This document shows positions 1,854 to 38,890 of a stretch of DNA of 39,451 bases, one piece after another. The stretch comes from Octopus bimaculoides (Eukaryota): the NCBI RefSeq assembly GCF_001194135.2, contig NC_068986.1, positions 68,775,469 to 68,814,919 of the forward strand. Direction: 5' to 3'. The translations under genes and the position numbers were made by a program. The notes beneath the pieces are model-generated. The model did no database searches, was not told where the DNA came from, and was given only the letters and a program-made list of their open reading frames with translations. Positions within the stretch are counted from its first letter, which is position 1. The number at the start of each line of letters is the position of its first letter.

Positions 1854-3679
1854 CAACGTCCTCTCTGCCTCTCCACTCTAATAACATACTTCAATAATAA
1901 CAACAATATTTAGGACAAACTTTGTTAGTAAGATAATTATTTTCTAATCTTATTATTATTAGAGTCAACTGGTATTGATGTCAAGTATCAAGACAAAGAT
2001 TAAGAGCCAGTGTGAATCCAAAACAAAATCTTCACACTGAATTCAAACACAGCAGCCAGAGTAGTTGTTTCATAATGCTCAACTAATATGTGTTATCAGC
2101 CATTCTGATTAACATTGAGCTAATTCTAGTTTTGTTAACATATCAGATATGTATGAGATGCTTCTTATTATTGATCATGCACTTCACCTATGAGCCAAAT
2201 GCTTGGTGTACATCCAGAAAAAATATCAGAATAAAAATGTATGCTTGAATTTTTTTAAATATAAAAGAATAGTAAAAATAAAAGTATATTAAACCAGGTA
2301 AATAAGCTACAGTATAGATTTTGTGCAAAATCAATCCAAATTTCCTGGTGATATATTGCATCATTTCTTGAATTTTCTCATCGATTCTTTGAAAGGCATT
2401 TTCTGTAAAATCTTATGCCACATAAACATCGTAAACTATTGGGAAAAACTCATTTTTGAAATAAAATGTGTCAGCTGTCCCCAGCAGAAATTTTCTTTGG
2501 AGTTAAATACAATATATTTTATGAATCTTGGCAATGTTGAACTTTCATGCTACAGTAAAGTTAATTAGTTAAAAATAAAGATATTTCCTTTGAAACCATA
2601 TTTAATAAAGAAATAATATTGCAATACAACTGCATAACAATGCAAGAAAGAAACTCTATTTTATTTATTGTTTGAATACAAATTTATTTTATTGCTGATT
2701 TCCCTGTTTTGAATCAAACTTTTTACAATGCAATTAGCATTATAAATGAGAGGAAAAAGAATAGTAAGGGTAACACAAGTAAAATATTGATTTTATTTTG
2801 GAAGGAGAATGAGTATAACTGATCTTTTTAGTGTTCAGATTATTAACTGAGTTCAATGAGTTATAGGGGCATCACAAAATACTTTATCTTTATGTGGTGT
2901 ATCAAAAGCTAGTAAGTCTATCATAAATCATTCTTCTCCAAGTTAACTTCATATAAGTAATCAAACTCAGCACTACAACTTAACACAATATTTGTCAATT
3001 TTACCGTACATTTACTACTTACAGGAGTAGAAGCTTTAAAACAATGCTGAATCTATTTACAGCTTGATGAACTGACTTGTTGAGTGTTTATATTACAGAT
3101 ATATTATCTGCTAATCAAATTACAGCAAACACAGATCCTTTGGATTAGTGTATTGATACTTCAGAACTCTGGTATTTTTTATTGTCTATGGAAGAATAAA
3201 AAACTTATCTGATCATATCACCTTTACTCAGAGTCAGAGCAAGTGAGATTAGAAAAACAGATTAGTAGTTGAATATGAAATTAACTAGAAAGTAGTTTGG
3301 TGGTTTGTATTCATCACACAAATGATTAAAAAGCAATGAATTTGCATTGAGATCAACTCAGTTTGGTCACTTCAATCCCTACCTTCTCTTTTATATACCA
3401 CATGTCTACTGTATCACCTCAACTCCTAAATCAATGATATATACAATACTTTTCACCAGTTCAAAGATTTGACCTATTTTAAAAGTTTGTCAACATGTCT
3501 ACATTTTCATCTTTTTACTTTATATCATGCATTTATGAATGAAGAAAGTATTGTTGGTTATAGGTTTTCTATGGCCCAATCACTAAGTTACTGTATTTTT
3601 AATGGTGAAAATGACAAGAGAGTATCTGTGCAACTTGGGTAGAATAAAAACTACAAGGTATTTTTTGTTCCATGCTGGA

Positions 3680-24379: not shown

Positions 24380-24717
24380 ATTAAAGACCTGTGATATGCA
24401 GGACACTGACTGGGAGAACAATGCCTGTCATCGCCACGGATGGAGGAAGCAGGTTAAGGAGGGGATCGACACTTTCGAGAGAGCACGTATCCAGTATGAA
24501 GAACTCAAGCGAGCTGCGCGAAAGTGCACGGCTCATATAGTGAATGGGGAAAGCTTGGTCTGCAATATTTGCAGTCGTGTATGCTTGTCAAGAGCAGGGC
24601 TCATTAGCCACCAACGGAGCTGCAAATTCAAAATATAAGTTAGTTTTAGAATGCACAATGTTCCTGAAGGTCGGCAATGGTCTTCCTCGGTCACAAGTGG
24701 ACGGCCATCATCATCAT
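24380..24717 (+). mobile_element. 5'-truncated RTE (BovB-like) LINE 3' end with C2H2 zinc finger
   Basis: Open frame SLKTCDMQDTDWENNACHRHGWRKQVKEGIDTFERARIQYEELKRAARK...CNICSRVCLSRAGLISHQRSC* then short 3' UTR ending GGACGGC(CAT)n. Confidence 0.88.
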
Positions 24718-24771
24718 GTAGGTATGTGTGTGTATGTATGTGTGAGTGAGTATGTATGTATGTACATACGT

Positions 24772-25150
24772 AATGTCTGTATGTTTTCTTTCTCTTTTTA
24801 ATTTTCTGTAAATTTTGACTACTCACCTACTTAGTAGGAAGGTCGTGAAGGAAAGTATTTTATTCTAACTTTCATCCTTTAAACCTTAAGAAGGTCTTTC
24901 AGATTTTTATAATCCCAGATACCATGGTCATTTATTGGTAGCATCTGAATTAAGGATTTGCATTCCCTGCTCAAGATCCCAAGTTCAGCCATATTTTACT
25001 CGAAACGGTTTGATATGTATCCTGTGGCTCCAGTAATAATAGGTATGATGCTGAAAGTGTATCTTGGGTATTGGATTTGCAAGCTCCTTATCAATGATCC
25101 ATAGATGTCCTCTTTCTCTTGTATTTTTCTAACCATATTGGTGTCCTGAA
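24772..25150 (-). mobile_element. RLE non-LTR retrotransposon 3' fragment in (CATA)n
   Basis: DTNMVRKIQEKEDIYGSLIRSLQIQYPRYTFSIIPIITGATGYISNRFE*NMAELG...KTFLRF, homologous to 34137-34650; (TATG)n on both flanks. Confidence 0.8.
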
Positions 25151-25491
25151 GGCAGTGTATGTATGTATGGATGGATGGATGTATACCACACAGCCACGTC
25201 TATATATAGGCCAAATTTACTTTATAAAATAACTTATCTCCCTTTACTTAAGTTTAAATTTGCTGTGATCAATATTTATCTGAAATGGTCAATAAAATAA
25301 TATCAGTTGCATAGTGTGATCGTACATATTTATTGCCCCAGATGTAGTGAAGAGCAATTTTAACCTACAAAACATGATGAAAACGCTTGATGAAATATCA
25401 TTCATTCTTATATTGTTATTTTATTCATTTTTAAAAATAAAGCATCTTAAACGCAAATGGAATTTTAATATAAAAATATCCATGGACTTTA

Positions 25492-25547
<56 letters not shown>

Positions 25548-25587
25548 TTTCAAATTTTTCCACAAGGGCAGCAATTTTGGGGAAATG

Positions 25588-25688
25588 GATGAGTTGACTA
25601 AATCGACTCTAGTGTTCAACTGGTGCTTATTTTATCGACCTCAAAGGGATGAAAGGTGAAGTCGACCTCGGCGGAATTTGAACTCAGA
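25588..25688 (-). mobile_element. SINE family B, cut by gap
   Basis: AAATCGACTCTAG...GATGAAAGGTGAAGTCGACCTCGGCGGAATTTGAACTCAGA. Confidence 0.85.
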
Positions 25689-26345
25689 NNNNNNNNNNNN
25701 NNNNNNNNNNNNNNNNNNNNNNNNNNNNNNNNNNNNNNNNNNNNNNNNNNNNNNNNNNNNNNNNNNNNNNNNNNNNNNNNNNNNNNNNNNNNNNNNNNNN
25801 NNNNNNNNNNNNNNNNNNNNNNNNNNNNNNNNNNNNNNNNNNNNNNNNNNNNNNNNNNNNNNNNNNNNNNNNNNNNNNNNNNNNNNNNNNNNNNNNNNNN
25901 NNNNNNNNNNNNNNNNNNNNNNNNNNNNNNNNNNNNNNNNNNNNNNNNNNNNNNNNNNNNNNNNNNNNNNNNNNNNNNNNNNNNNNNNNNNNNNNNNNNN
26001 NNNNNNNNNNNNNNNNNNNNNNNNNNNNNNNNNNNNNNNNNNNNNNNNNNNNNNNNNNNNNNNNNNNNNNNNNNNNNNNNNNNNNNNNNNNNNNNNNNNN
26101 NNNNNNNNNNNNNNNNNNNNNNNNNNNNNNNNNNNNNNNNNNNNNNNNNNNNNNNNNNNNNNNNNNNNNNNNNNNNNNNNNNNNNNNNNNNNNNNNNNNN
26201 NNNNNNNNNNNNNNNNNNNNNNNNNNNNNNNNNNNNNNNNNNNNNNNNNNNNNNNNNNNNNNNNNNNNNNNNNNNNNNNNNNNNNNNNNNNNNNNNNNNN
26301 NNNNNNNNNNNNNNNNNNNNNNNNNNNNNNNNNNNNNNNNNNNNN

Positions 26346-26402
26346 CACCACATGTCCATACCAGCGCAATCGTCTCTCTTGCACGCCACAACTGATGTTT
26401 CT
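26346..26402 (-). mobile_element. RTE LINE fragment continuing into the gap
   Basis: Translates ISCGVQERRLRWYGHVV (RTE RRLRWYGHV motif). Confidence 0.8.
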
Positions 26403-26429
26403 AAATAATAATAATAATAATAATAATAA

Positions 26430-27098
26430 CACATCAAATACAGAATAGACAACACATCAGAAAGTGATAAGTGCAGAATTTGTGTACAAAATGGTGAAAC
26501 CGTATGGCATATTACCAGTCAATGTACGCCACTGATCCAGAAAGAATATAAGAGACGTCATGACAATATAGCAAGGATTGTCCATTGGACACTTTGCAAC
26601 AAGTATGGATTTCACAGAGCAAAAACGTGGTACGAATATAAACCCGAAGGCATCATCGAAAATGATAATGCAAAGATCCTATGAGATTTTATGATTCAGT
26701 GCGACCATGAGATAGAGAATAGGAAACCAGGCAGTGTTAATTGAGAAAGAAAGCAAACGATGCTGGATCATAGATATAGCATGCCCAGCTAACAACAAGG
26801 TATGTAATAAGGAAGAAAGAAAAGTCGAGAGATATGAAAGGTTAGCTTGGGAGGTTAAGCGGTTGTGGTCGCTGAAAAAGGTGGTAGTAGTACCAATAAC
26901 TGTCAGAGCCCTGGGAACAGTGAGTAAAAATCTTGAGAAGTACGTGGAACAAATAGGGGCTACAATAAGTGTGGAGTACTTGCAGAAAACAGCACTGCTT
27001 GGAACCGCTCGAATACTCCCGAAGGTGCTCGAAAAATAAGGAGTGTTACCTTAATTCACTGGTAGTGAACAGCTGATACTGTAGTACATCTCCAGCGT
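26430..27098 (+). mobile_element. 5'-truncated R4/Dong-like RLE LINE (pseudogenised)
   Basis: CCHC knuckle CRICVQNGETVWHITSQC, KRRHDNIARIVHW, W-to-stop at 26682-26684 in IL(W)DF, RKP(D) with frameshift, then IIDIACP..K...KVERYERL...VVPITVRALG..LQKTALLGTARIL; preceded by (TAA)n. Confidence 0.92.
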
Positions 27099-27104
27099 CT
27101 TTTT

Positions 27105-27285
27105 ACTGGAAGCACAACGCCTCACATCTGGGGAAAGGGATTAAGTCGATTACATCAACTCCAGTGCGTAACTGGTACTTATTTAATTGACCTCAAAAAG
27201 ACGAAAGGCAAAGTCGACCTCAATGGAATTTGAACTCAGAACATAGTGACTGGCAAAATGCCGCAAATACTTTTGTCCAGCACGC
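27105..27285 (-). mobile_element. SINE family B
   Basis: AAGTCGATTACATC...GAAAGGCAAAGTCGACCTC...TTGAACTCAGAAC. Confidence 0.85.
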
Positions 27286-27796
27286 GATACAACAACAACA
27301 GCAACAACAATAATAATAATAATAATAATCATTGCAATATTCGTTATCAACAAGCAATAAACTATATCAAAAGTACATTTTTTGGAAATTTCCAGATTCA
27401 GTTTTGTGGTTGGAAGAAAACGAAAAAATTCCTACATTTTACGAGAGAAAATAGTAATTGTGACGTTCATATTATTCTCAGTCTTACACATCTTTTCACC
27501 CCACCCTCACTGCACGTGCGCTCACACACACAAACACACACACACACACATGCTCACGCACACAAAACATCCTGTTTACTAAAAAAAGAAACAAAGCTCC
27601 ATTTCTGGAATTTAGAGGATGATAGTGGTGAAGACTTATTGAAAATTCCTGCCTATTTTTACTCTTCCGTTTATCTATTTTACAAATTGTAATTGCAAAG
27701 CGCATGTTAGCTGATTATTGTCTTCATCTGAAAACTCCAGATTTTCAAAATAGCCATTGTATCATTTGCCAACATAATCAAGTGTATCAATACGTA

Positions 27797-27822
27797 TCTT
27801 ACATATTAAAACTGAAAATGTC

Positions 27823-27863
<41 letters not shown>

Positions 27864-28127
27864 CGGAATGTACACGTTTCGCGCCAAAACGGCTCGACCG
27901 ATTTTTCTTAAACTTCACACGCACATTGCTTATGTGTCTGGGGAGGTTTTAAGTATAAATTGATTTCGAAAAAAATGTTCGGGTAGACGGCGGGAGGAAT
28001 AACATTTGGGCGCGAGTGAACAGTGAGAGTAATGATTTTTAAGCTTCCAAGGGAAATAACCCATTCCCTCCTGGAAATGACCACCAAGGTAAATAACCCA
28101 TTCATTTTTCGTATGCTTATTTCTTAG
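27797..28127 (+). mobile_element. Helitron-like non-autonomous element
   Basis: A|TC start, AAAACTGAAAATGTCTGTGTG microsatellite and ACGGCTCGACCGATTT motif typical of non-autonomous Helitrons; 3' end uncertain. Confidence 0.45.
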
Positions 28128-28471
28128 TATTTGAACTATTTTAGTTATTTTCTCAATTTATCCAATACAACGCTTAAACAAGTAAATAGTATTCCCCTAA
28201 ACAATAGATCCACTTATTTCAGTTAGTGACTTATTCGTGCTGCTGAGGGTAATATTCTCTGGGAACGCACGAAAGCTTTTTTTTCACAGTTAATTACTTT
28301 GAATTGTTATTATCTCATATCTGATTAGCCTGTTATTACGTAACATGCTTCACGATTTTAGTATACATACCTTATTAGTATTTCCTCCTAAAATCTATAT
28401 ACTCTGGGAACGTATTAAAGCCATTTTCGGGGCTACTTTATTTGAATTTTTTAGACACTATCTTTGTTTAC

Positions 28472-28530
28472 CTCATATTTGTTTAATACATTTTCATCAA
28501 TATCTAGGTATTTGTAGCAGCTGTTATATG
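28472..28530 (-). CDS. Candidate 59-nt internal exon of the minus-strand gene
   Basis: Branch-like GCTAAC, then tttttatttcatttgtag|CA TAT AAC...TAT GAG|gtaaac; only one frame is open: YNSCYKYLDIDENVLNKYE; ends in phase 0, matching the exon starting at 21835. Confidence 0.5.
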
Positions 28531-29164
28531 CTACAAATGAAATAAAAAGACCCTTGATACAAAGATTTTTGGGTTAGCAAACTGTTTTTGCATTCAAATA
28601 TCAAATATAAAGATTTTTGTTGCCAAAGTTCAGTCCTACATCAGTTGAAAATATTGCTACTAAATCCAAACATTTTCCAAATTCTAAATATTTAGATCGT
28701 CCATAAAGAAACCGTGGGTTATATTGGTGTCTCTTGCCGCTTTAAATCCTATTATATAACAAGTGACATTTTGTAATTCAAATTGCAGGAGATTCAGTGC
28801 CGAAATACTCGTAAGCACAAACGAAGACAATGTCATTTTGAAATATTTCTTTTGAAACTCACTCTTCAACTTTTATCAACTACAAGTGTATAGATGTAAA
28901 TGTTTTAGAGTTACTTTGCTGAAAGAGAACTAGAATTATGTGGTTGTGTAAAGGAACTGTATGTCTTTATACATACATCCATGTTTTACATAACTGTAGA
29001 TGAAAGCAAAACAATATCCATAGAGCCTCTTTGTGATTACTAGATATGCCAGATAAAGCGGCGAAATCAGCTTCAGAGCTGATTCTACATTCTCATAAAT
29101 TATATAGTTCTGTATTCTCTGCTGCTGCTGCTGAATAATAATAATAATAATAATAATAATTATA

Positions 29165-29570
29165 ATAAAATTCATTTATTAGCCACAAGGGCTTAAATAA
29201 AATTACATTAAAATACATACAACATCATGAAAGACAAAAGGACGATACAATGAGTTTTACAGAGTGTAAACAATATATATAGCGATTAAAAATTGAACAA
29301 TTTACCACTCCCAATAGGGGAGGCGCTTTAAGGACCTCGTGGAAAAACCCAGAAAAGTCACAGGGGCCTTCTCCTTTTGTTTACAGGTGCAGACTCAGAA
29401 TTGGTCCTTTTACATTGGTCATTCTTCCAACAGTCACCTACTTTTCAACAAACTCGCTACAAGGCAACACTTCCTTCTCCACGCTCAACTTCCTTTTCAA
29501 GTGAAACTTGAAAGAGTTGATGAGGGCTTGGCCAAAGAGGAATAATCTCGAATCGAATGTTTAATTATAG
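29165..29570 (-). mobile_element. Tx1/L1-like LINE 3' end
   Basis: FLFGQALINSFKFHLKRKLSVEKEVLPCSEFVEK*(W)VTVGRMTNVKGPILSLHL*, resembling Tx1 ORF2 termini; T-rich 3' UTR, AATAAA, then (ATT)n. Confidence 0.6.
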
Positions 29571-29610
29571 GTCTACTCAGTCAGAGTTAACTTGGGGTTA
29601 AAACAAGACG

Positions 29611-29692
29611 ACGACGGCGACAACAACAACAACAACAGCAACAACAACAACAACAGCAACAACAACAACAACAACAGCAATAACAGCAACAA
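29611..29692. repeat. (GAC)/(CAA)/(CAG) trinucleotide tract
   Basis: Directly visible; follows a GTTAACTTGGGGTTAAAAC motif resembling 38928-38950. Confidence 0.9.
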
Positions 29693-30621
29693 AATTTCAC
29701 CCGAATGTCACTATTCGCTGGAATGTTGCTCATATGATCAGTGAATCTGACCAATTGCCATTTCGCCTGGAAAGAATATTGCCCAAATGATCGACCGGAT
29801 CCGGATCTGGCCAATCATAACCTCACACAGCGACAAATCTCACTTTGGCCTCTTTCTTTCTGACCTTTTCAGTAGGTATAAAAGGACACACACACACACG
29901 ACTAGGACCCAGGACCCAGAGAGCTTTGAGACAGCGCAGAGAGAACCTTGAGTTGTAGCAGACATGGCGAACAGATATAGGCAGCGGTTGAGTCAAGCTA
30001 TTACCATCAAGATGAACCTAGCCTTCAACATAGGAACTTTTCACAGAAACACAATGACTAACAATAACTTCAATTACAACATTTTAACTCTCTCAACATT
30101 GTAATTATACTATTTTTAATAACATTCCAACTATCAACCAGAAATAAAAGTTATTAGTAAAATCAACAAATTTCATCATTTTCTTCTATGTAAAACTGTT
30201 GACCTCCGACGCGAGAAACAACAACCAGCACCTCCAAGACTAGCAGTCAGATACAGCTCCTAGCGTTTAGCAAATTAGCTCAGGTACCAGTGGCATCCCC
30301 ACATATTAACAGCCACAGCTGTGTCAGCAAAAATCACTTTGCAATTTATTTTTTGATCAAAAACATTCTTTTCTCAAGAAGGCACGTGAACTTCATTCAT
30401 TTTTTAAAAGGTAATATCTATCCCCACTTAAACGTAGATGTTCTTTTAGAACAACCTATACTGCTGGAGATACCATAAGAGAAACTCTCATACTGGCTTT
30501 TCATGCAGATGATATCTCTCATGATATCTACCGCAGTATAGTTTGTTCTAACAGAACATCCACATTTAAGTTTGGATAAATATTACCCCTCACTATAAAC
30601 ACTGCCTCTGTCACTAATATA

Positions 30622-31103
30622 TCTATATATATATATAATATTAAGAATGTATGTGTGTGTGTGTGTGTCTGTGTCTGTGTGAATCCCTAAAACTCCAGAA
30701 CTACACAACCAATTTCATTCAAATTTTACACATGCCATACTTAGGTTGTGTTTTAGTCAAAATTTTTTTTTTAATCTTGCATAGTTCGAGCCCTCAGCAA
30801 CATAATATATCCTCCACTATTTAAGTATTATGTGTCAAAAGTGAAACAAAAACACTCATGTCAAATACTTTCACTTTAAAAATGAAACTTTTCCACTATT
30901 TCAGTATCAAAACTGAAACAATCACATTTCGATACTGTAATGACAGATACTTTCACTTTAATGGTTTCATTTCCATACTGAAAGTACAACAGTGAAACTA
31001 TACTCTCACATATATACAGGCATACATATATACATACATACATGCATATATATCTGCACAAATGTATCCATATACATGTATATAGATATACATGTATATA
31101 TAT

Positions 31104-31134
<31 letters not shown>

Positions 31135-32781
31135 CAGAGAGAGAAAGAGAGATGTATATGTATACATGTATACATATACATGTATATGTACGCATATATG
31201 TATAGATATATATATAGATATAGATCTATATGCATACATGTATATGTATATGTATAGATGTACATGTAATATGTACACATATATACACATATATACATTC
31301 ATACAGATATCTAGACATATATACACACACATACACATGCACACAAACACACACATTGCTCATTTGTTTTTTTTTATCCAAAACTACGTCAAAAGTACTG
31401 AATGGATCTTNNNNNNNNNNTTGTGAAATTCAAACAATACATATTAGACCCAAGTTAAAAACATTCCCAACAATTCAACTTCTCTGGTTGACATTAACAC
31501 CCCACCCACAATTGGGGCCTTAACTCCCACATTTTTCAGCCCCAAGAGCTCCATTTTTCAAGAGCAAAATTCTTTTTACAGGGTTCATAACACTAGAATT
31601 TTCGAATATGCGCATAAATGTCACATATATAAAGATGAGAATGTGTGTCTGTGTGAATCCCTAAAACTCCAGAACTACACAACCAATATCATTCCAAATT
31701 AACACATGCCTTACTTAGGGTCCATGTAGTGTCTTAGGCCAAAACAATTTTTAACTTCTTGCATAGTTCGAGCTTACAGCAATATCATATCTCCTCCACT
31801 ATTTCACTATTACGTGTCAAAAGTGAAACAATAACATCACTCTACTGTAATGTCAGATACTTTCACTTTAACACTGAAACTATTCCACTATTTCAGTATT
31901 ACATGTCAAAAGTGAAGCAATAACATGTCGCTACTGTAATTTCAAATACTTTCACTTTAATACTTCCAATTTCATACTGAAACTATTAAAGTGAAACTAT
32001 ACTCTCACATATATACAAGCATACTATAAGACCCAAGTTAAAAACATTCCCAACAATTCANNNNNNNNNNAACCAATATCATTCCAAATTAACACATGCC
32101 TTACTTAGGGTCCATGTAGTGTCTTAGGCCAAAACAATTTTTAACTTCTTGCATAGTTCGAGCTTACAGCAATATCATATCTCCTCCACTATTTCACTAT
32201 TACGTGTCAAAAGTGAAACAATAACATCACTCTACTGTAATGTCAGATACTTTCACTTTAACACTGAAACTATTCCACTATTTCAGTATTACATGTCAAA
32301 AGTGAAGCAATAACATGTCGCTACTGTAATTTCAAATACTTTCACTTTAATACTTCCAATTTCATACTGAAACTATTAAAGTGAAACTATACTCTCACAT
32401 ATATACAAGCATACTATAAGACCCAAGTTAAAAACATTCCCAACAATTCAACTCCTCTGGTTGACATTAACACCCCCACCCCCAATAGGGACCTTCATTC
32501 CCACATTTTATAGCTCCATGAGTTCCATTTCTCAGGAGCAAAATCCTTTCTACAGGTTCCAGAAGACTGAAATTTTGGAATATGCGCATAAAGATCAATA
32601 GTATGGGATACATGTCTCATGATTAGAAATTTTTTAGGGTGTGTAAAGAGGGAAAGAACCCTCATGTGCAATTTTGATGAAATTCGAATCATATGTATTC
32701 CAATTCCCTACAGAAAATATAAGAGAAAAGTCTCATCCTTCAATTGCATGTAACACGGGCAACGCCGGGTATTTCTGCTAG
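30622..32781 (+). mobile_element. Non-autonomous Helitron with internal tandem units
   Basis: A|TCTATATATATATATAAT start; 3' CGGGCAACGCCGGG hairpin then CTGCTAG|T; no target duplication; unit GTGAATCCCTAAAACTCCAGAACTACAC occurs at ~30680 and ~31650. Confidence 0.82.
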
Positions 32782-33132
32782 TATTTTTATAAAGGTTATT
32801 AACTTGTAGGCTACACACTCCATTTCCTACGCAATCGGTAATCTGTGTTTGTGTGTGGTTGGGGGGAGGGGGTCTTTGGTCGTGAATGAACTAGCGAGTC
32901 GGAGTATTGATATATGTGCGTTGGTGTGTATAACTGCGCAGATGGAACTAAATACAAATGTAACAATAATATTGTATTTAGATAAGATTTATACAACTTT
33001 TATCTTTAAATTATCATAAAATAACATTAAAATATTTAAGATTACAGTTCAACTCAAACATTAATATCAAAGAAACAATACAAATGCATGTATGCATGTA
33101 TGTATGTATGCATGTATGTATGTATGTATGTG

Positions 33133-33300
33133 TAGGGCCGGCTCAAAGTACCGGCAACTCAGGCAGTTACCCGGGGCGCCATGTACTATAAGAAGCGTCA
33201 AGGAGCACGTGACAACGACAAGGAAATTTCCACGATCATCAGCTTGTACACGCCGAAGTTCAACTTGCCCGGGGCGCCAGCAACCATAGGGCTGACCTTC
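33133..33300 (+). mobile_element. GC-rich hAT-like MITE in a (TATG)n tract
   Basis: TAGGGCCGGCTC start, degenerate GGGCTGACCTTC end, CCCGGGGCGCC twice; TGTATGTG on both flanks (weak evidence inside a microsatellite). Confidence 0.5.
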
Positions 33301-33309
33301 TGTATGTGT

Positions 33310-33535
33310 GTATGTATAATATGTATGTCTTTTTCTCTTTTAATTTAGAGTAATTTTTGACCGGTCACCGACATGGTAACAAGGTTTATAAGGAAAGTAT
33401 CATGATTTAACTGACATCCTTTAAATTTTAAGGTCTTGCAGATTTTTAGTCTCAGATCTGAATTTGCAAACTTCTTATTAATGATCGATAGATGTCCTCT
33501 TTCTTTTGTATTTTTCTAACCACATTTGTGTTCAG
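33310..33535 (-). mobile_element. Internally deleted copy of the (CATA)n RLE element
   Basis: Shares GATAGATGTCCTCTTTC..TTGTATTTTTCTAACCA and the 3' UTR with 24772-25150. Confidence 0.78.
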
Positions 33536-33569
33536 GGTATGTATGTATGTATGTATGTATGTATGTATG

Positions 33570-33800
33570 TATGTATATATGATAAAAATTGTCATTAACA
33601 CTAATGATTTCTCTTGCCATTATGGATGTAATTTCAAAAGATTAAAAATCCCTTTTGGTTCACTACATTGTTGTTTTTAGATTTTTAAACTGTCTGTGCT
33701 TAGTAATTGCTTGAATAACCTCAGATGATCAAGATTATACATGTACATATATAATCTTGACAGAATTTTGATGAGAATGTTCCACCAATATTCCTTGCGT
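33570..33800 (-). mobile_element. Decayed copy of the (CATA)n RLE element
   Basis: Begins RKEYWWNILIK, matching KKEY*WNVQMK of the copy at 34137; (CATA)n on both sides. Confidence 0.55.
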
Positions 33801-34136
33801 TACGTATGAATATATTATACATACATACATACATACATACATNNNNNNNNNNNNNNNNNNNNNNNNNNNNNNNNNNNNNNNNNNNNNNNNNNNNNNNNNN
33901 NNNNNNNNNNNNNNNNNNNNNNNNNNNNNNNNNNNNNNNNNNNNNNNNNNNNNNNNNNNNNNNNNNNNNNNNNNNNNNNNNNNNNNNNNNNNNNNNNNNN
34001 NNNNNNNNNNNNNNNNNNNNNNNNNNNNNNNNNNNNNNNNNNNNNNNNNNNNNNNNNNNNNNNNNNNNNNNNNNNNNNNNNNNNNNNNNNNNNNNNNNNN
34101 NNNNNNNNNNNNNNNNNNNNNNNNNNNNNNNNNNNN

Positions 34137-34915
34137 ACTACCGATAAGACATGATGCTGTAGCTAGGACACTCTATAATGAAATCCGTCAGAAGGATTAT
34201 CCCGAGGAGAAAGAAATAAGAATCCACAATATGGTAGAAGTCATAGCCACTCATAATAAAAAGGAATATTAGTGGAATGTACAAATGAAGACTTCAATAA
34301 AATGTAAGCACAACAAACCTGACATAATGAGTTGGGATATAAGAAGAGAAACTGTACAGTTGTGGAAATTAGCTGCCCAGCGGATGTTAACATAAAGCTG
34401 AAGATCAGTGAAACAGAGAATACCTATGCTGAACTATTGAGGAATCTGCAGTTACTCTATCCAGATTACAAACTCAAGTAATTATTGTAATTGTTGGGCC
34501 CTGGGATATGTAACACACCGCCTAACCAATCTAGAGAAATTAGGCTTCTCAAAACCAGAAAGGGGAAAGATAATTCGAAGACTGCAGATCCAGTCCATCA
34601 CTGGAACTGTAAAAATCTGTAAAACTTATCTGAAGTTTATCATTTAAATATATATGAGAATGTCTAGATATGCAACTATATGCATGAGAATACATACATA
34701 CGTACGTACGTACATACATACATACATACATACATACATACATACATACATACATACATACATACATACATACATACATACAAACAAACAAAAAAACAAA
34801 GAAAAACACTCTGCTGTTTGATGTTGAAATTTCAGTGAAGGCGCCTTGGATCTAGGTTACAAACCGGTTCTTTCTATTGGTAAGAAATCTTGAAATAGAA
34901 CTCAACAATGACATA
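34137..34915 (+). mobile_element. RLE non-LTR retrotransposon 3' part (pseudogenised)
   Basis: IRHDAVARTLYNEIRQKD...KEY*WN...KHNKPDIMSWD, frameshift, CTVVEISCPADVNIKLKISETENTYAELLRNLQLLYPDYK...LGFSKPERGKIIRRLQIQSITGTVKICKTYLKF*; RHD, PD and E-x-x-C-P are RLE hallmarks; putative 3' UTR ends ACAATGACATAC. Confidence 0.88.
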
Positions 34916-38578: not shown

Positions 38579-38890
38579 GGGCGATCTAGGCCGATATTTA
38601 GGTAATCGTACCAGGGTGAGTGTTTAGGGTTAGGGTTACGGTTACGGTTAGGGACGGAATTCCTTAACGCAAACCCTAAAACCCAAACCCTAACCGTAAA
38701 CCTAACCCTAACCCTAACTCTAAACCCTTCAAAATAAATCGCGCTCTCTGTATGTCTTTCGCTGTTATGACATCGTTTCCCTGTTTCTCTCCAACACTTT
38801 TTACGGAAAGGGCCGATATTTAGGTAATTGTACCGAAAGATCGCCCTAACCCTAACCCTAAAACCCTAACCCTGACACTAAAACCCTAAC
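38579..38890. repeat. Element with telomere-like TTAGGG/CCCTAA tracts
   Basis: TTAGGG-type 38624-38653, CCCTAA-type 38672-38727 and 38844-38890; 24-bp direct repeat and 9-bp inverted repeat. Confidence 0.85.

What the first reader, a model, noticed from the sequence alone, without database searches (positions are those of the whole stretch)
24772..34915. RLE non-LTR retrotransposon family apparently targeting (CATA)n microsatellites (4 copies)
Four homologous fragments (24772-25150 -, 33310-33535 -, 33570-33800 -, 34137-34915 +) encode parts of the same restriction-like endonuclease C-terminus (RHD, KEYWWN, KPD, EISCP, LRNLQ..YP). Every copy has (CATA)n on its sense strand at its flanks (for 34137, the 5' tract lies across the gap), so element orientation follows repeat orientation. 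Sequence-specific targeting of simple repeats is established for RLE elements (e.g. Dong into TAA). I do not recall a CATA-specific lineage, so it may be undescribed. Two different 3' UTRs suggest two subfamilies. That targeting causes the pattern is inference.
Basis: partly seen in the sequence, partly recalled or inferred. Interest (0 to 1): 0.75.

Follow-up and report, generated by a model that had tools for sequence, protein, structure and literature searches.

The report
CATA-repeat-targeting LINE retrotransposons in octopus
Decayed copies of R2/Dong-type jumping genes sit inside (CATA)n simple repeats in this octopus DNA, all pointing the same way; homing into microsatellites is a known habit of this class, but I found no paper reporting this repeat motif for it.

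Summary
The core of the finding holds, with corrections.

**What is there**
- The fragments are remnants of non-LTR retrotransposons with a C-terminal CCHC plus restriction-like endonuclease (RLE). Sequence and fold match only R2 proteins among solved structures.
- They belong to two families, about 40-46% identical at protein level, not two subfamilies.

**Corrections to the observation**
- Copies 1 and 2 are flanked exactly on both sides by same-sense (CATA)n.
- Copy 3 is real but covers only about 45-60 nt, and its 5' tract has the opposite sense.
- Copy 4's 5' end is lost in an assembly gap.
- Copy 4's "3' flank" is a microsatellite inside its 3' UTR. The element really ends near 34912.
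- Two further RLE-LINE remnants were missed: a Dong-like copy in (TAA)n and an old RT fragment.

**Evidence from elsewhere**
- An Octopus vulgaris copy has a (CCAT)n(CATA)n 5' junction.
- A 20-kb locus from another organism holds five different families, all in one orientation, within one (CATA)n array.
- Sister families lie in (TTAC)n.

**Verdict**
Target-primed insertion specific to a microsatellite is the best explanation. This is a new member of a known kind (Dong, HERO and Togen types). Repbase and Dfam could not be checked.

The parts
24716..24773 (-). 3' flank of copy 1: imperfect (CATA)n read on the minus strand
24774..25155 (-). Copy 1: 5'-truncated RLE-LINE remnant. It runs from CLQDTNMVRK (25154-25125) through the decayed end of the ORF and a 3' UTR of about 110 bp ending ...AGAAAGAAAA
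   Evidence: It is 65% identical in protein to P0165.
25156..25187 (-). 5' flank of copy 1: (CATC)3(CATA)3 read on the minus strand, abutting the element
33291..33318 (-). 3' flank of copy 2: imperfect (CATA)n read on the minus strand
33319..33535 (-). Copy 2: same family as copy 1. Its 5' end lies within about 3 nt of copy 1's, and it has an internal deletion of about 150 bp.
33536..33584 (-). (CATA)n read on the minus strand: the 5' flank of copy 2, lying downstream of the copy 3 fragment
33752..33814 (-). Copy 3: short coding fragment (YIHT..KEYWWNILIK) of the copy-4-type family. The rest of 33582-33751 has no relative.
33817..33842 (+). (CATA)n read on the plus strand, ending at the assembly gap. 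It has the opposite sense to copy 3. It could be the 5' flank of copy 4, but this cannot be verified.
33843..34136 (.). Assembly gap that removes the 5' part of copy 4 (CCHC motif and everything upstream)
   Evidence: Reads were unavailable.
34137..34647 (+). Copy 4 coding remnant: RLE domain from LPIRHD to KICKTYLKFII*, with 2 in-frame stops and 1 frameshift
34648..34692 (+). Copy 4 proximal 3' UTR
   Evidence: 86% identical to L002
34693..34794 (+). (CATA)n followed by an A-rich stretch, internal to the 3' UTR of the copy-4 family. It is not a flank.
34795..34912 (+). Copy 4 distal 3' UTR, ending ...CAACAATGA|CATAC. It is shared with L002 and homologous to the 3' UTR of the (TTAC)n sister family.
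26404..27330 (+). Not in the finding: a Dong-like RLE copy at 26430-27130 (CCHC, RHD, ..LLGTARIL). It has (AAT)n at 26404-26429 upstream. Downstream lie a SINE (27131-27293) and then (CAA)n(TAA)n at 27285-27330.
28424..28857 (-). Not in the finding: an old, stop-ridden RT fragment (ITHGFFMDDLNI; FSTDVGLNFG) of the same LINE group

Best explanation
The fragments are dead copies of two related families of single-ORF non-LTR retrotransposons of the R2 group. The ORF has an N-terminal region, an RT, a CCHC knuckle and a PD-(D/E)xK restriction-like endonuclease.

**Inferred mechanism**
- The elements integrate by target-primed reverse transcription specifically into (CATA)n microsatellites, in one orientation.
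- The protein recognises the repeat.
- The RLE nicks the (TATG)n strand.
- The freed 3' OH primes cDNA synthesis at the element's 3' end. That end abuts CATA in a near-constant phase (...A|CATA).
- Incomplete reverse transcription gives variable 5' truncations joined again to (CATA)n.

**Shown**: element identity, domain content, exact repeat junctions and constant orientation.
**Inferred**: the nick site, the priming step and the domain that recognises the target.
For: **Identity**
- A family profile hits the R2 CCHC+RLE region at E 6e-4, aligning CxxC..H..C, RH, the K..KY helix and the GxxG strand (motifs as defined in PMC4838377).
- P0055 hits only R2 proteins, at 1e-24.
- Foldseek on the AlphaFold model gives R2Tg at E 2.7e-10 and TM 0.55, then R2Bm, then other PD-(D/E)xK nucleases.
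- Full-length relatives of 1085-1161 aa carry RVT_1 and no APE.

**Targeting in octopus**
- Copies 1 and 2 have same-sense (CATA)n at both exact ends. The chance probability is 8e-4 per copy.
- The 5' flank of copy 1 is preceded by unrelated sequence, not by another copy.
- L002 (O. vulgaris), truncated at a different point, joins (CCAT)n(CATA)3 at its 5' end and CATAT at its 3' end.

**Targeting elsewhere**
- L009 has copies A1, A2, B, C and D, from five different families. Three (A1, A2, C) are truncated at different points, and B and D run on into 5' leader sequence. All lie on the plus strand, separated by seven plus-sense (CATA)n tracts, with none of the other sense.
- L011 is an intact ORF whose 3' UTR ends in (CATA)n.
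- P0138 and P0039 are gene models that read from HTYIHTYI or PSIHPYIHT straight into the RLE.

**Sister families**
- L003, L004 (full length, about 4.5 kb), L005, L006, P0103 and P0126 all lie in same-sense (TTAC)n.
- A Dong-like copy in the window lies in (TAA)n.
- The 3' junction phase is ...A|CATA against ...A|CTTA.
Against: - Only 3-4 octopus insertions could be examined.
- Copies 1 and 2 start within about 3 nt of each other, so they may represent one event or a non-autonomous derivative.
- The copy-4 family carries (CATA)n inside its 3' UTR and has only about one CATA unit after its true 3' end, in both copies seen.
- The 5' side of copy 3 faces a tract of the opposite sense.
- The O. 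bimaculoides copy L001 has no clear repeat at its 5' junction, and its 3' part is deleted.
- No empty-site comparison was possible, and no biochemical evidence exists.
- The organisms behind L003-L006, L009 and L011 are unknown.
Confidence: 0.78

Rival explanations
1. The (CATA)n tracts are made or carried by the elements themselves: a microsatellite 3' tail or UTR repeat, as in RTE, CR1 and L2 LINEs. Integration would be essentially non-specific, and upstream tracts would be tails of neighbouring copies.
For: - The copy-4 family does carry (CATA)n inside its 3' UTR.
- Octopus RTE elements are reported to end in a microsatellite (PMC9115989).
- The 5' tract of copy 2 lies just downstream of the copy 3 fragment.
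Against: - The 5' junctions of copy 1 and L002 abut repeats that are preceded by unrelated SINE-like sequence, not by another copy.
- In L009, copies truncated at different RT or RLE positions each start exactly at the repeat.
- L003 has about 70 bp of perfect (TTAC)n on its 5' side.
Confidence: 0.1
2. The association is passive. LINE fragments and microsatellites both accumulate in the same repeat-rich, low-recombination DNA, or the RLE merely prefers AT-rich flexible DNA, as proposed for Drosophila Waldo-A and Waldo-B near CA repeats.
For: - The window is dense in simple repeats, with about 40 loosely defined CATA-like tracts, and in SINEs.
- Waldo-A/B is a literature precedent (PMC3812793).
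Against: - The junctions are exact to the base.
- The sense is constant. In L009, five independent insertions on the plus strand lie among seven (CATA)n tracts that are all plus-sense, with none of the other sense. In the window, copies 1 and 2 have same-sense tracts at both ends. The single exception found is the 5' side of copy 3.
- P(both ends in a same-sense tract) is 8e-4.
- Related families show different but equally exact repeats.
Confidence: 0.06
3. The in-window pattern is a by-product of local duplication or mis-assembly around microsatellites. It would then not reflect several insertions.
For: - Gaps lie at 33843-34136, 31411-31420 and 32061-32070.
- A 390-bp unit is duplicated at 97%.
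- Repeat sense flips at 33816/33817.
- Copies 1 and 2 share a 5' end.
- In L009, copy E is a segmental duplicate of copy D.
Against: - Copies 1 and 2 lie in gap-free sequence 8 kb apart. They are only 75-89% identical and have unrelated outer flanks.
- Independent loci from other assemblies show the same pattern.
Confidence: 0.05

Closest known systems
Dong (R4 clade; Bombyx mori, DongAg, DongBg of the snail Biomphalaria)
   Same: - It is an RLE-bearing, single-ORF non-LTR retrotransposon that inserts into a microsatellite in a fixed orientation (PMC3812793, PMC4640811).
- Octopus repeat libraries already list abundant 'Dong-R4' LINEs, including a full-length 'Dong' (PMC13282606, PMC9115989).
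- A Dong-like copy in (TAA)n sits in this same window.
   Different: - Dong's target is (TAA)n. Here the repeat is the tetranucleotide (CATA)n, and (TTAC)n in sister families.
- The in-window Dong-like copy is only 30-37% identical in the RLE and falls in a separate branch of my rough tree.
- Clade membership by RT phylogeny was not testable.
Microsatellite-specific HERO family of the leech, and Togen (TG)n families of fish
   Same: They are RLE-type LINEs with microsatellite targets, and one is from a lophotrochozoan (cited in PMC4640811).
   Different: The motif of the leech family is not given in the texts I could read. Togen targets (TG)n. No sequence was available for comparison.
Waldo (R1 clade; WaldoAg1/2, WaldoFs1)
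   Same: It targets ACAY repeats, which include (ACAT)n = (CATA)n (PMC3812793).
   Different: Waldo uses an APE-type endonuclease and has two ORFs. The elements here have a C-terminal RLE and no APE. The shared target is convergent.
R2 (28S rDNA-specific; R2Bm, R2Tg)
   Same: - R2 proteins are the only solved structures that match, in both sequence and fold.
- The RT-CCHC-RLE order is the same.
- The RH, PD, D/E and K..KY motifs are shared.
- R2 is the mechanistic model for target-primed reverse transcription.
   Different: - The target is a microsatellite, not rDNA.
- The N-terminus has no recognisable zinc finger or Myb domain in Pfam. It has a conserved W.YEL..D.Y..Y..A..DP..GY...K..W...HP motif instead.
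- Rfam found no HDV-like ribozyme.

Membership tests
RLE-type non-LTR retrotransposons (R2 group: R2, R4, HERO, NeSL, CRE) | C-terminal CCHC motif followed by a PD-(D/E)xK restriction-like endonuclease (RH, PD, D/E and K..KY motifs) | tested here: met
   - Copy 4 has RHD, KPD, the E of VVEISCP and K..E..Y.
- The CCHC motif is seen in relatives (CRLCK..H..C) but lies in the gap for copy 4.
- A family profile hits the R2 RLE.
- The fold matches R2Tg and R2Bm.
RLE-type non-LTR retrotransposons (R2 group) | Reverse transcriptase upstream in the same ORF, and no APE endonuclease | tested here: met
   - Full-length relatives P0055, P0062, P0140, P0142 and P0168 have RVT_1 only.
- P0207 and P0213 have an uninterrupted ORF of 1135-1161 aa.
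- In the window itself only an old RT fragment is present, at 28424-28857.
Target-specific (microsatellite-homing) LINEs | The same repeat at both junctions, constant orientation, and independent copies with different 5' truncation points | tested here: met
   - Copies 1 and 2, L002, L009 A1/A2/B/C/D and L011 show this for (CATA)n.
- L003-L006 show it for (TTAC)n.
- The octopus sample is small, at 3-4 insertions.
R4/Dong clade | RT-domain phylogeny groups the element with R4_AL, Dong or Rex6 reference sequences | not testable with these tools
   No reference sequences (Repbase) were available. The only indirect evidence is that published octopus annotations label such LINEs 'Dong-R4' (PMC13282606, PMC8967140).
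R4/Dong clade (Dong proper) | Insertion into (TAA)n | tested here: not met
   The flanks of the four fragments are (CATA)n, not (TAA)n. Only the separate copy at 26430-27130 lies in (AAT)n.
HERO clade | RT-domain phylogeny groups the element with HERO-1_SP, HERO-1_HR or HERO-1_BF | not testable with these tools
   No reference sequences were available.
Waldo / R1 clade (ACAY-specific) | N-terminal APE-type endonuclease | tested here: not met
   - Full-length relatives have no Exo_endo_phos or APE hit.
- The endonuclease is a C-terminal RLE.
- APE-bearing LINEs appear only as remote hits, at 24-27% identity.

The most novel reading that the evidence does not exclude
The elements would belong to an undescribed clade of RLE LINEs, widespread in cephalopods and other invertebrates.
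- Its families read tetranucleotide repeats sharing a TAC core: (TACA)n = (CATA)n and (TACT)n = (CTTA)n.
- They have switched between these one-base-different targets more than once.
- Target recognition would reside in the uncharacterised conserved N-terminal motif.

That would give a natural series for working out how R2-like integrases are retargeted.
Probability: 0.3. Interest if true: 0.55.

Novelty: new member of a known kind. Interest (0 to 1): 0.4.

Why it matters
**Annotation**
- It explains why microsatellites in octopus genomes are interrupted by LINE tails.
- It explains why assemblies break there. Gap 33843-34136 starts in the repeat.
- It explains why some "hypothetical proteins" are artefacts. 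P0039 of O. vulgaris is translated from a CATC/CATA repeat into a LINE fragment.

**Biology**
The set of related RLE elements gives comparative material for how target choice evolves in R2-like retrotransposons. The elements have exact junctions and lie in (CATA)n, (CTTA)n and (TAA)n. R2-like elements are now being developed as site-specific gene-insertion tools (PMC13580325).

**Limits**
It does not change the known picture that RLE LINEs home to repeats.

Tried and rejected
- **DNA similarity of copy 4 to copies 1-3.** None was significant.
- **Pfam on the window peptides and on the conserved N-terminal motif.** No hits.
- **Rfam.** Nothing in the window at gathering thresholds. In L009, L004 and L011 there was no HDV-like ribozyme or R2 RNA element at E<=1, and the mir-297 "hits" are just the repeat.
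- **L002 as the orthologue of copy 4.** Rejected. Homology stops at the element ends.
- **The 110-bp "tail" as a separate element.** Rejected in favour of a distal 3' UTR, because it aligns with the sister family's UTR.
- **The 170 bp downstream of copy 3.** It has no relative among UTRs or coding sequences.
- **Loci that gave little.**
  - L001 (O. bimaculoides) has an ambiguous 5' junction, and its 3' part is deleted.
  - L007, L008 and L010 were too short to show flanks.
  - P0115 was not on record.
  - The last protein search, with copy 1, returned only P0165.
- **Clade assignment (R4, HERO or NeSL).** Not possible without reference sequences. Cluster names gave no help.
- **Literature search for a (CATA)n-specific RLE lineage.** None was found. 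This is absence in the held library, not proof.


Full report
**Source of the window.** The window is octopus DNA. The best protein matches include Octopus vulgaris and O. bimaculoides gene models, and common octopus SINEs recur through it. The species was not established.

**What is in the window.** I re-read the four places.
- Copy 1 (24774-25155, minus) and copy 2 (33319-33535, minus) are one family. They are 89% identical over the first 73 bp and 75% over 143 bp of 3' UTR. Copy 2 lacks about 150 bp in the middle.
- Both copies begin within about 3 nt of each other, at CLQDTNMVRK / NTNVVRK, just inside the (E/D)xSCPxDxN motif.
- Copy 4 (34137 onward, plus) reads LPIRHD..KEY*WN..KPD..EISCPADVN..LRNLQLLYPDYK..GALGYV..GTVKICKTYLKFII*. 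It has two in-frame stops and one frameshift.
- Copy 4 is related to copies 1 and 2 only at protein level. No DNA match was significant, and copy 1 is about 40-46% identical to copy-4-type proteins. They are two families, not two subfamilies.
- Copy 3 is real but tiny. At 33752-33814 (minus) it reads YIHT..KEYWWNILIK and matches the coding DNA of a relative (L008) at about 30 of 32 nt. The other 170 bp of the stated interval has no relative.
- Two further remnants were missed. One is a Dong-like RLE copy at 26430-27130 (plus). The other is an old RT fragment at 28424-28857 (minus).

**Assembly gaps.**
- Only gap 33843-34136 touches a copy. Copy 4 starts, mid-domain, at the first base after it, and the other edge of the gap is (CATA)n. 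Its 5' end, its CCHC motif and the claimed "5' tract across the gap" therefore cannot be verified.
- Gaps 31411-31420 and 32061-32070 lie at or within a 390-bp unit duplicated at 97%. They look like scaffolding artefacts.
- The left edge of gap 25689-26345 lies inside a SINE copy. Its right edge lies 58 bp upstream of the (AAT)n tract that flanks the Dong-like copy.

**What the protein is.**
- Pfam finds nothing on the peptides themselves.
- A profile of 12 relatives hits the C-terminal CCHC+RLE region of R2 proteins at E 6e-4. It aligns the CxxC..H..C knuckle, the RH motif, the EK..(K)Y helix and the following strand. These are the motifs shown experimentally to form the R2Bm endonuclease (PMC4838377).
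- An exhaustive HMM search found 5739 relatives. The full-length ones (1085-1161 aa) have one ORF with RVT_1 and no APE domain.
- P0055 matches only R2 proteins in the PDB, at 1e-24.
- An AlphaFold model of P0004 has pLDDT above 80 over most of the RLE part and an alpha-beta-beta-beta-beta-alpha-beta order. Its five best structural matches are R2 proteins: three avian or turtle R2 structures (top hit R2Tg, E 2.7e-10, TM 0.55) and two R2Bm structures. Other PD-(D/E)xK nucleases follow.
- The RLE call is therefore sound.

**Flanks in the window.**
- Copies 1 and 2 have (CATA)n on their sense strand exactly at both ends:
  - copy 1, 5' junction: ...CATCCATCCATCCATACATACATACA|CTGCC...
  - copy 1, 3' junction: ...AGAAAGAAAA|CATACAGACATTACGTATGTACATACATACATAC
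  - copy 2, 5' junction: ...(CATA)10C|CCTGAAC...
  - copy 2, 3' junction...GAGAAAAAGA|CATACATATTATACATACAC.
- CATA-like tracts, loosely defined, cover 1.9% of the plus strand and 1.7% of the minus strand. A random 300-bp interval has both ends within 10 bp of a same-sense tract with probability 8e-4.
- The shared 5' end means copies 1 and 2 may not be independent. They could be a short non-autonomous derivative, a preferred truncation point or an old duplication. Their outer flanks are unrelated.
- Copy 3 has the shared tract 33536-33584 on its 3' side. On its 5' side it faces a tract of the opposite sense (33817-33842), 25 bp from the gap. This could be an inversion, a head-to-head arrangement or a mis-join.

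**Copy 4's tract is internal.**
- The 110 bp after the long tract (34804-34912) recurs after the tract in O. vulgaris locus L002, at 81% identity. Beyond the element the two loci are unrelated, so they are not orthologous.
- That segment aligns collinearly, to its last bases, with the distal 3' UTR of the (TTAC)n sister family. The score is 21 against 10.3 +/- 1.8 for shuffles, with 0 of 500 shuffles as high. The terminal motifs are ...AATGA|CATAC here and ...AATGACA|CTTA there.
The tract 34693-34794 lies inside the 3' UTR, and only about one CATA unit follows the true 3' end in both copies.
- Copy 4 alone therefore gives no flank evidence.

**Evidence from other loci.**
- L002 (O. vulgaris) is truncated at SENENTYAELL and joins (CCAT)n(CATA)3 directly. 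The annotated "hypothetical protein" P0039 is translated from that repeat into the LINE.
- L009 is a 20-kb stretch of a 3-Mb contig from an unidentified organism with no DNA similarity to the window. It has seven (CATA)n tracts, all plus-sense, and none of the other sense.
  - Between the tracts lie copies of five different families, all on the plus strand.
  - A1 is truncated in RT and A2 at another RT position. B and D run on into about 450 bp of leader sequence. C is truncated at the KPD motif.
  - D is 4.2 kb with a single interruption of its roughly 1230-aa ORF.
  - A sixth copy, E, is a segmental duplicate of D.
- L011 carries the intact 1085-aa ORF of P0055. It ends, 130 bp after the stop, in (CATA)n at the contig end.
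- Sister families lie in same-sense (TTAC)n.
  - L003 has perfect tracts on both sides.
  - L004 is full length, about 4.5 kb.
  - L005 and L006 are older, with decayed tracts and different truncation points.
  - The gene models P0103 and P0126 read into LLTYLLTY.
- The in-window Dong-like copy has (AAT)n at its 5' end. On its 3' side, beyond a 90-bp 3' UTR and a SINE, lies (CAA)n(TAA)n.
- The L001 copy (O. bimaculoides) is uninformative.

**Relationships.**
- I built a rough neighbour-joining tree of the RLE region. It is a short alignment with no outgroup, so it is only indicative.
- Both octopus CATA families fall in one "SCPADVN" group together with the TTAC families.
- The L009 CATA families, P0055 (CATA) and P0126 (TTAC) fall in a second "VPLD" group.
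- The Dong-like copy falls in a third group.
- (CATA)n and (CTTA)n, which equals (TTAC)n, differ by one base per unit. The 3' junctions mostly read ...A|CATA or ...A|CTTA.
- I infer repeated switching between closely similar tetranucleotide targets. This is not shown.

**Mechanism.**
- Established knowledge of R2 (PMC4838377, PMC4640811) is that the RLE nicks one target strand and the 3' OH primes reverse transcription of the element RNA from its 3' end.
- Applied here, by inference, the (TATG)n strand is nicked after G. cDNA synthesis starts at the element's terminal A-rich end, possibly helped by pairing with CAUA units on read-through RNA. Incomplete synthesis yields 5' truncations rejoined to the repeat.
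- Constant orientation on an asymmetric repeat requires strand-specific recognition.
- The candidate recognition domain is the conserved N-terminal motif (W.YEL..D.Y..Y..A..DP..GY...K..W...HP). It has no Pfam match, so this is a guess.
- Rfam found no 5' HDV-like ribozyme.

**Comparison with what is known, and novelty.**
- Microsatellite homing is documented for LINEs:
  - Dong in (TAA)n, including a snail element;
  - Waldo (ACAY), Mino (AC), Kibi (TC) and Koshi (TTC), all of the APE-type R1 clade (PMC3812793);
  - a leech HERO family and fish Togen in (TG)n (PMC4640811).
- "Dong-R4" LINEs are already annotated as abundant, and partly young, in octopus genomes. A full-length "Dong" exists in the O. 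bimaculoides repeat library. Those papers do not discuss any target (PMC13282606, PMC8967140, PMC9115989).
- I found no paper describing a (CATA)n- or (TTAC)n-specific RLE lineage.
- Repbase and Dfam entries often record such targets, and I could not consult them.
- The fair label is a new member of a known kind. For a specialist it is unsurprising, but it offers useful comparative material.

**Limits.**
- Only 3-4 octopus insertions were examined.
- The donor organisms of L003-L006, L009 and L011 are unknown. An Argonauta protein (P0222) shows that octopods carry the group.
- Clade placement was not tested.
- No empty sites were examined.

Noticed in passing
window 26404-27330: A fifth RLE-LINE copy that the finding did not list. 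It is Dong-like (CRICV..H..C, RHDNIA, ..LLGTARIL) at 26430-27130 (plus strand). (AAT)n lies directly upstream. Downstream lie a common octopus SINE (27131-27293) and then (CAA)n(TAA)n. So two kinds of microsatellite-homing RLE element share this window.
   Followed up: partly
window 28424-28857 (minus strand): An old, stop-ridden RT fragment (ITHGFFMDDLNI; FSTDVGLNFG) of the same LINE group. Weak RLE-like matches at 27642-27824 may be its C-terminal end.
   Followed up: partly
window 33132-33290: A 160-bp GC-rich insert splits the (ATGT)n tract next to copy 2. It contains two direct CCCGGGGCGCC motifs. No relative was found in the window or in the fetched loci, and Rfam gave no match.
   Followed up: partly
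window 31681-32451 (gaps 31411-31420 and 32061-32070): A 390-bp unit is present twice at 97% identity, with 10-N gaps beside and inside it. This is probably a scaffolding or gap-filling artefact rather than a real tandem repeat.
   Followed up: no
window 38672-38890: Interstitial telomere-like (AACCCT)n / (CCCTAA)n arrays.
   Followed up: no
L002 ~3010-3075; L009 9300-9362 and 17480-17545: Antisense tRNA-like SINE heads abut the (CCAT/CATA)n tracts directly. This occurs in O. vulgaris and in the unrelated organism of L009. It suggests that another element also uses these repeats, or that the SINEs carry them.
   Followed up: no
L009 10040-10078 and 15590-15660: A repeated unit (..CCGCTGCCCTTAAC..GGGTCTTGG..CGAATCTCAT) ends in (CATA)n. 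It may be a non-autonomous partner of the CATA-homing LINEs.
   Followed up: no
L009 4588-4620; L004 6752-6790: Full-length elements of different families and organisms share CAAGACGTGT within the first 30 nt after the repeat. This may be a conserved 5'-terminal signal. Rfam finds no ribozyme there.
   Followed up: partly
L002 3001-3327 (O. vulgaris OX597824.1): The annotated 'Hypothetical predicted protein' P0039 is an artefact gene model. It is translated from SINE-like sequence and a (CCAT/CATA)n repeat into a 5'-truncated LINE RLE fragment.
   Followed up: yes
L009 10957-15199 and 15745-16481: Element D is 4.2 kb with a single ORF interruption. Its 3' part plus flank is duplicated at 99.6% identity. 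The family looks recently active in that unidentified genome.
   Followed up: partly
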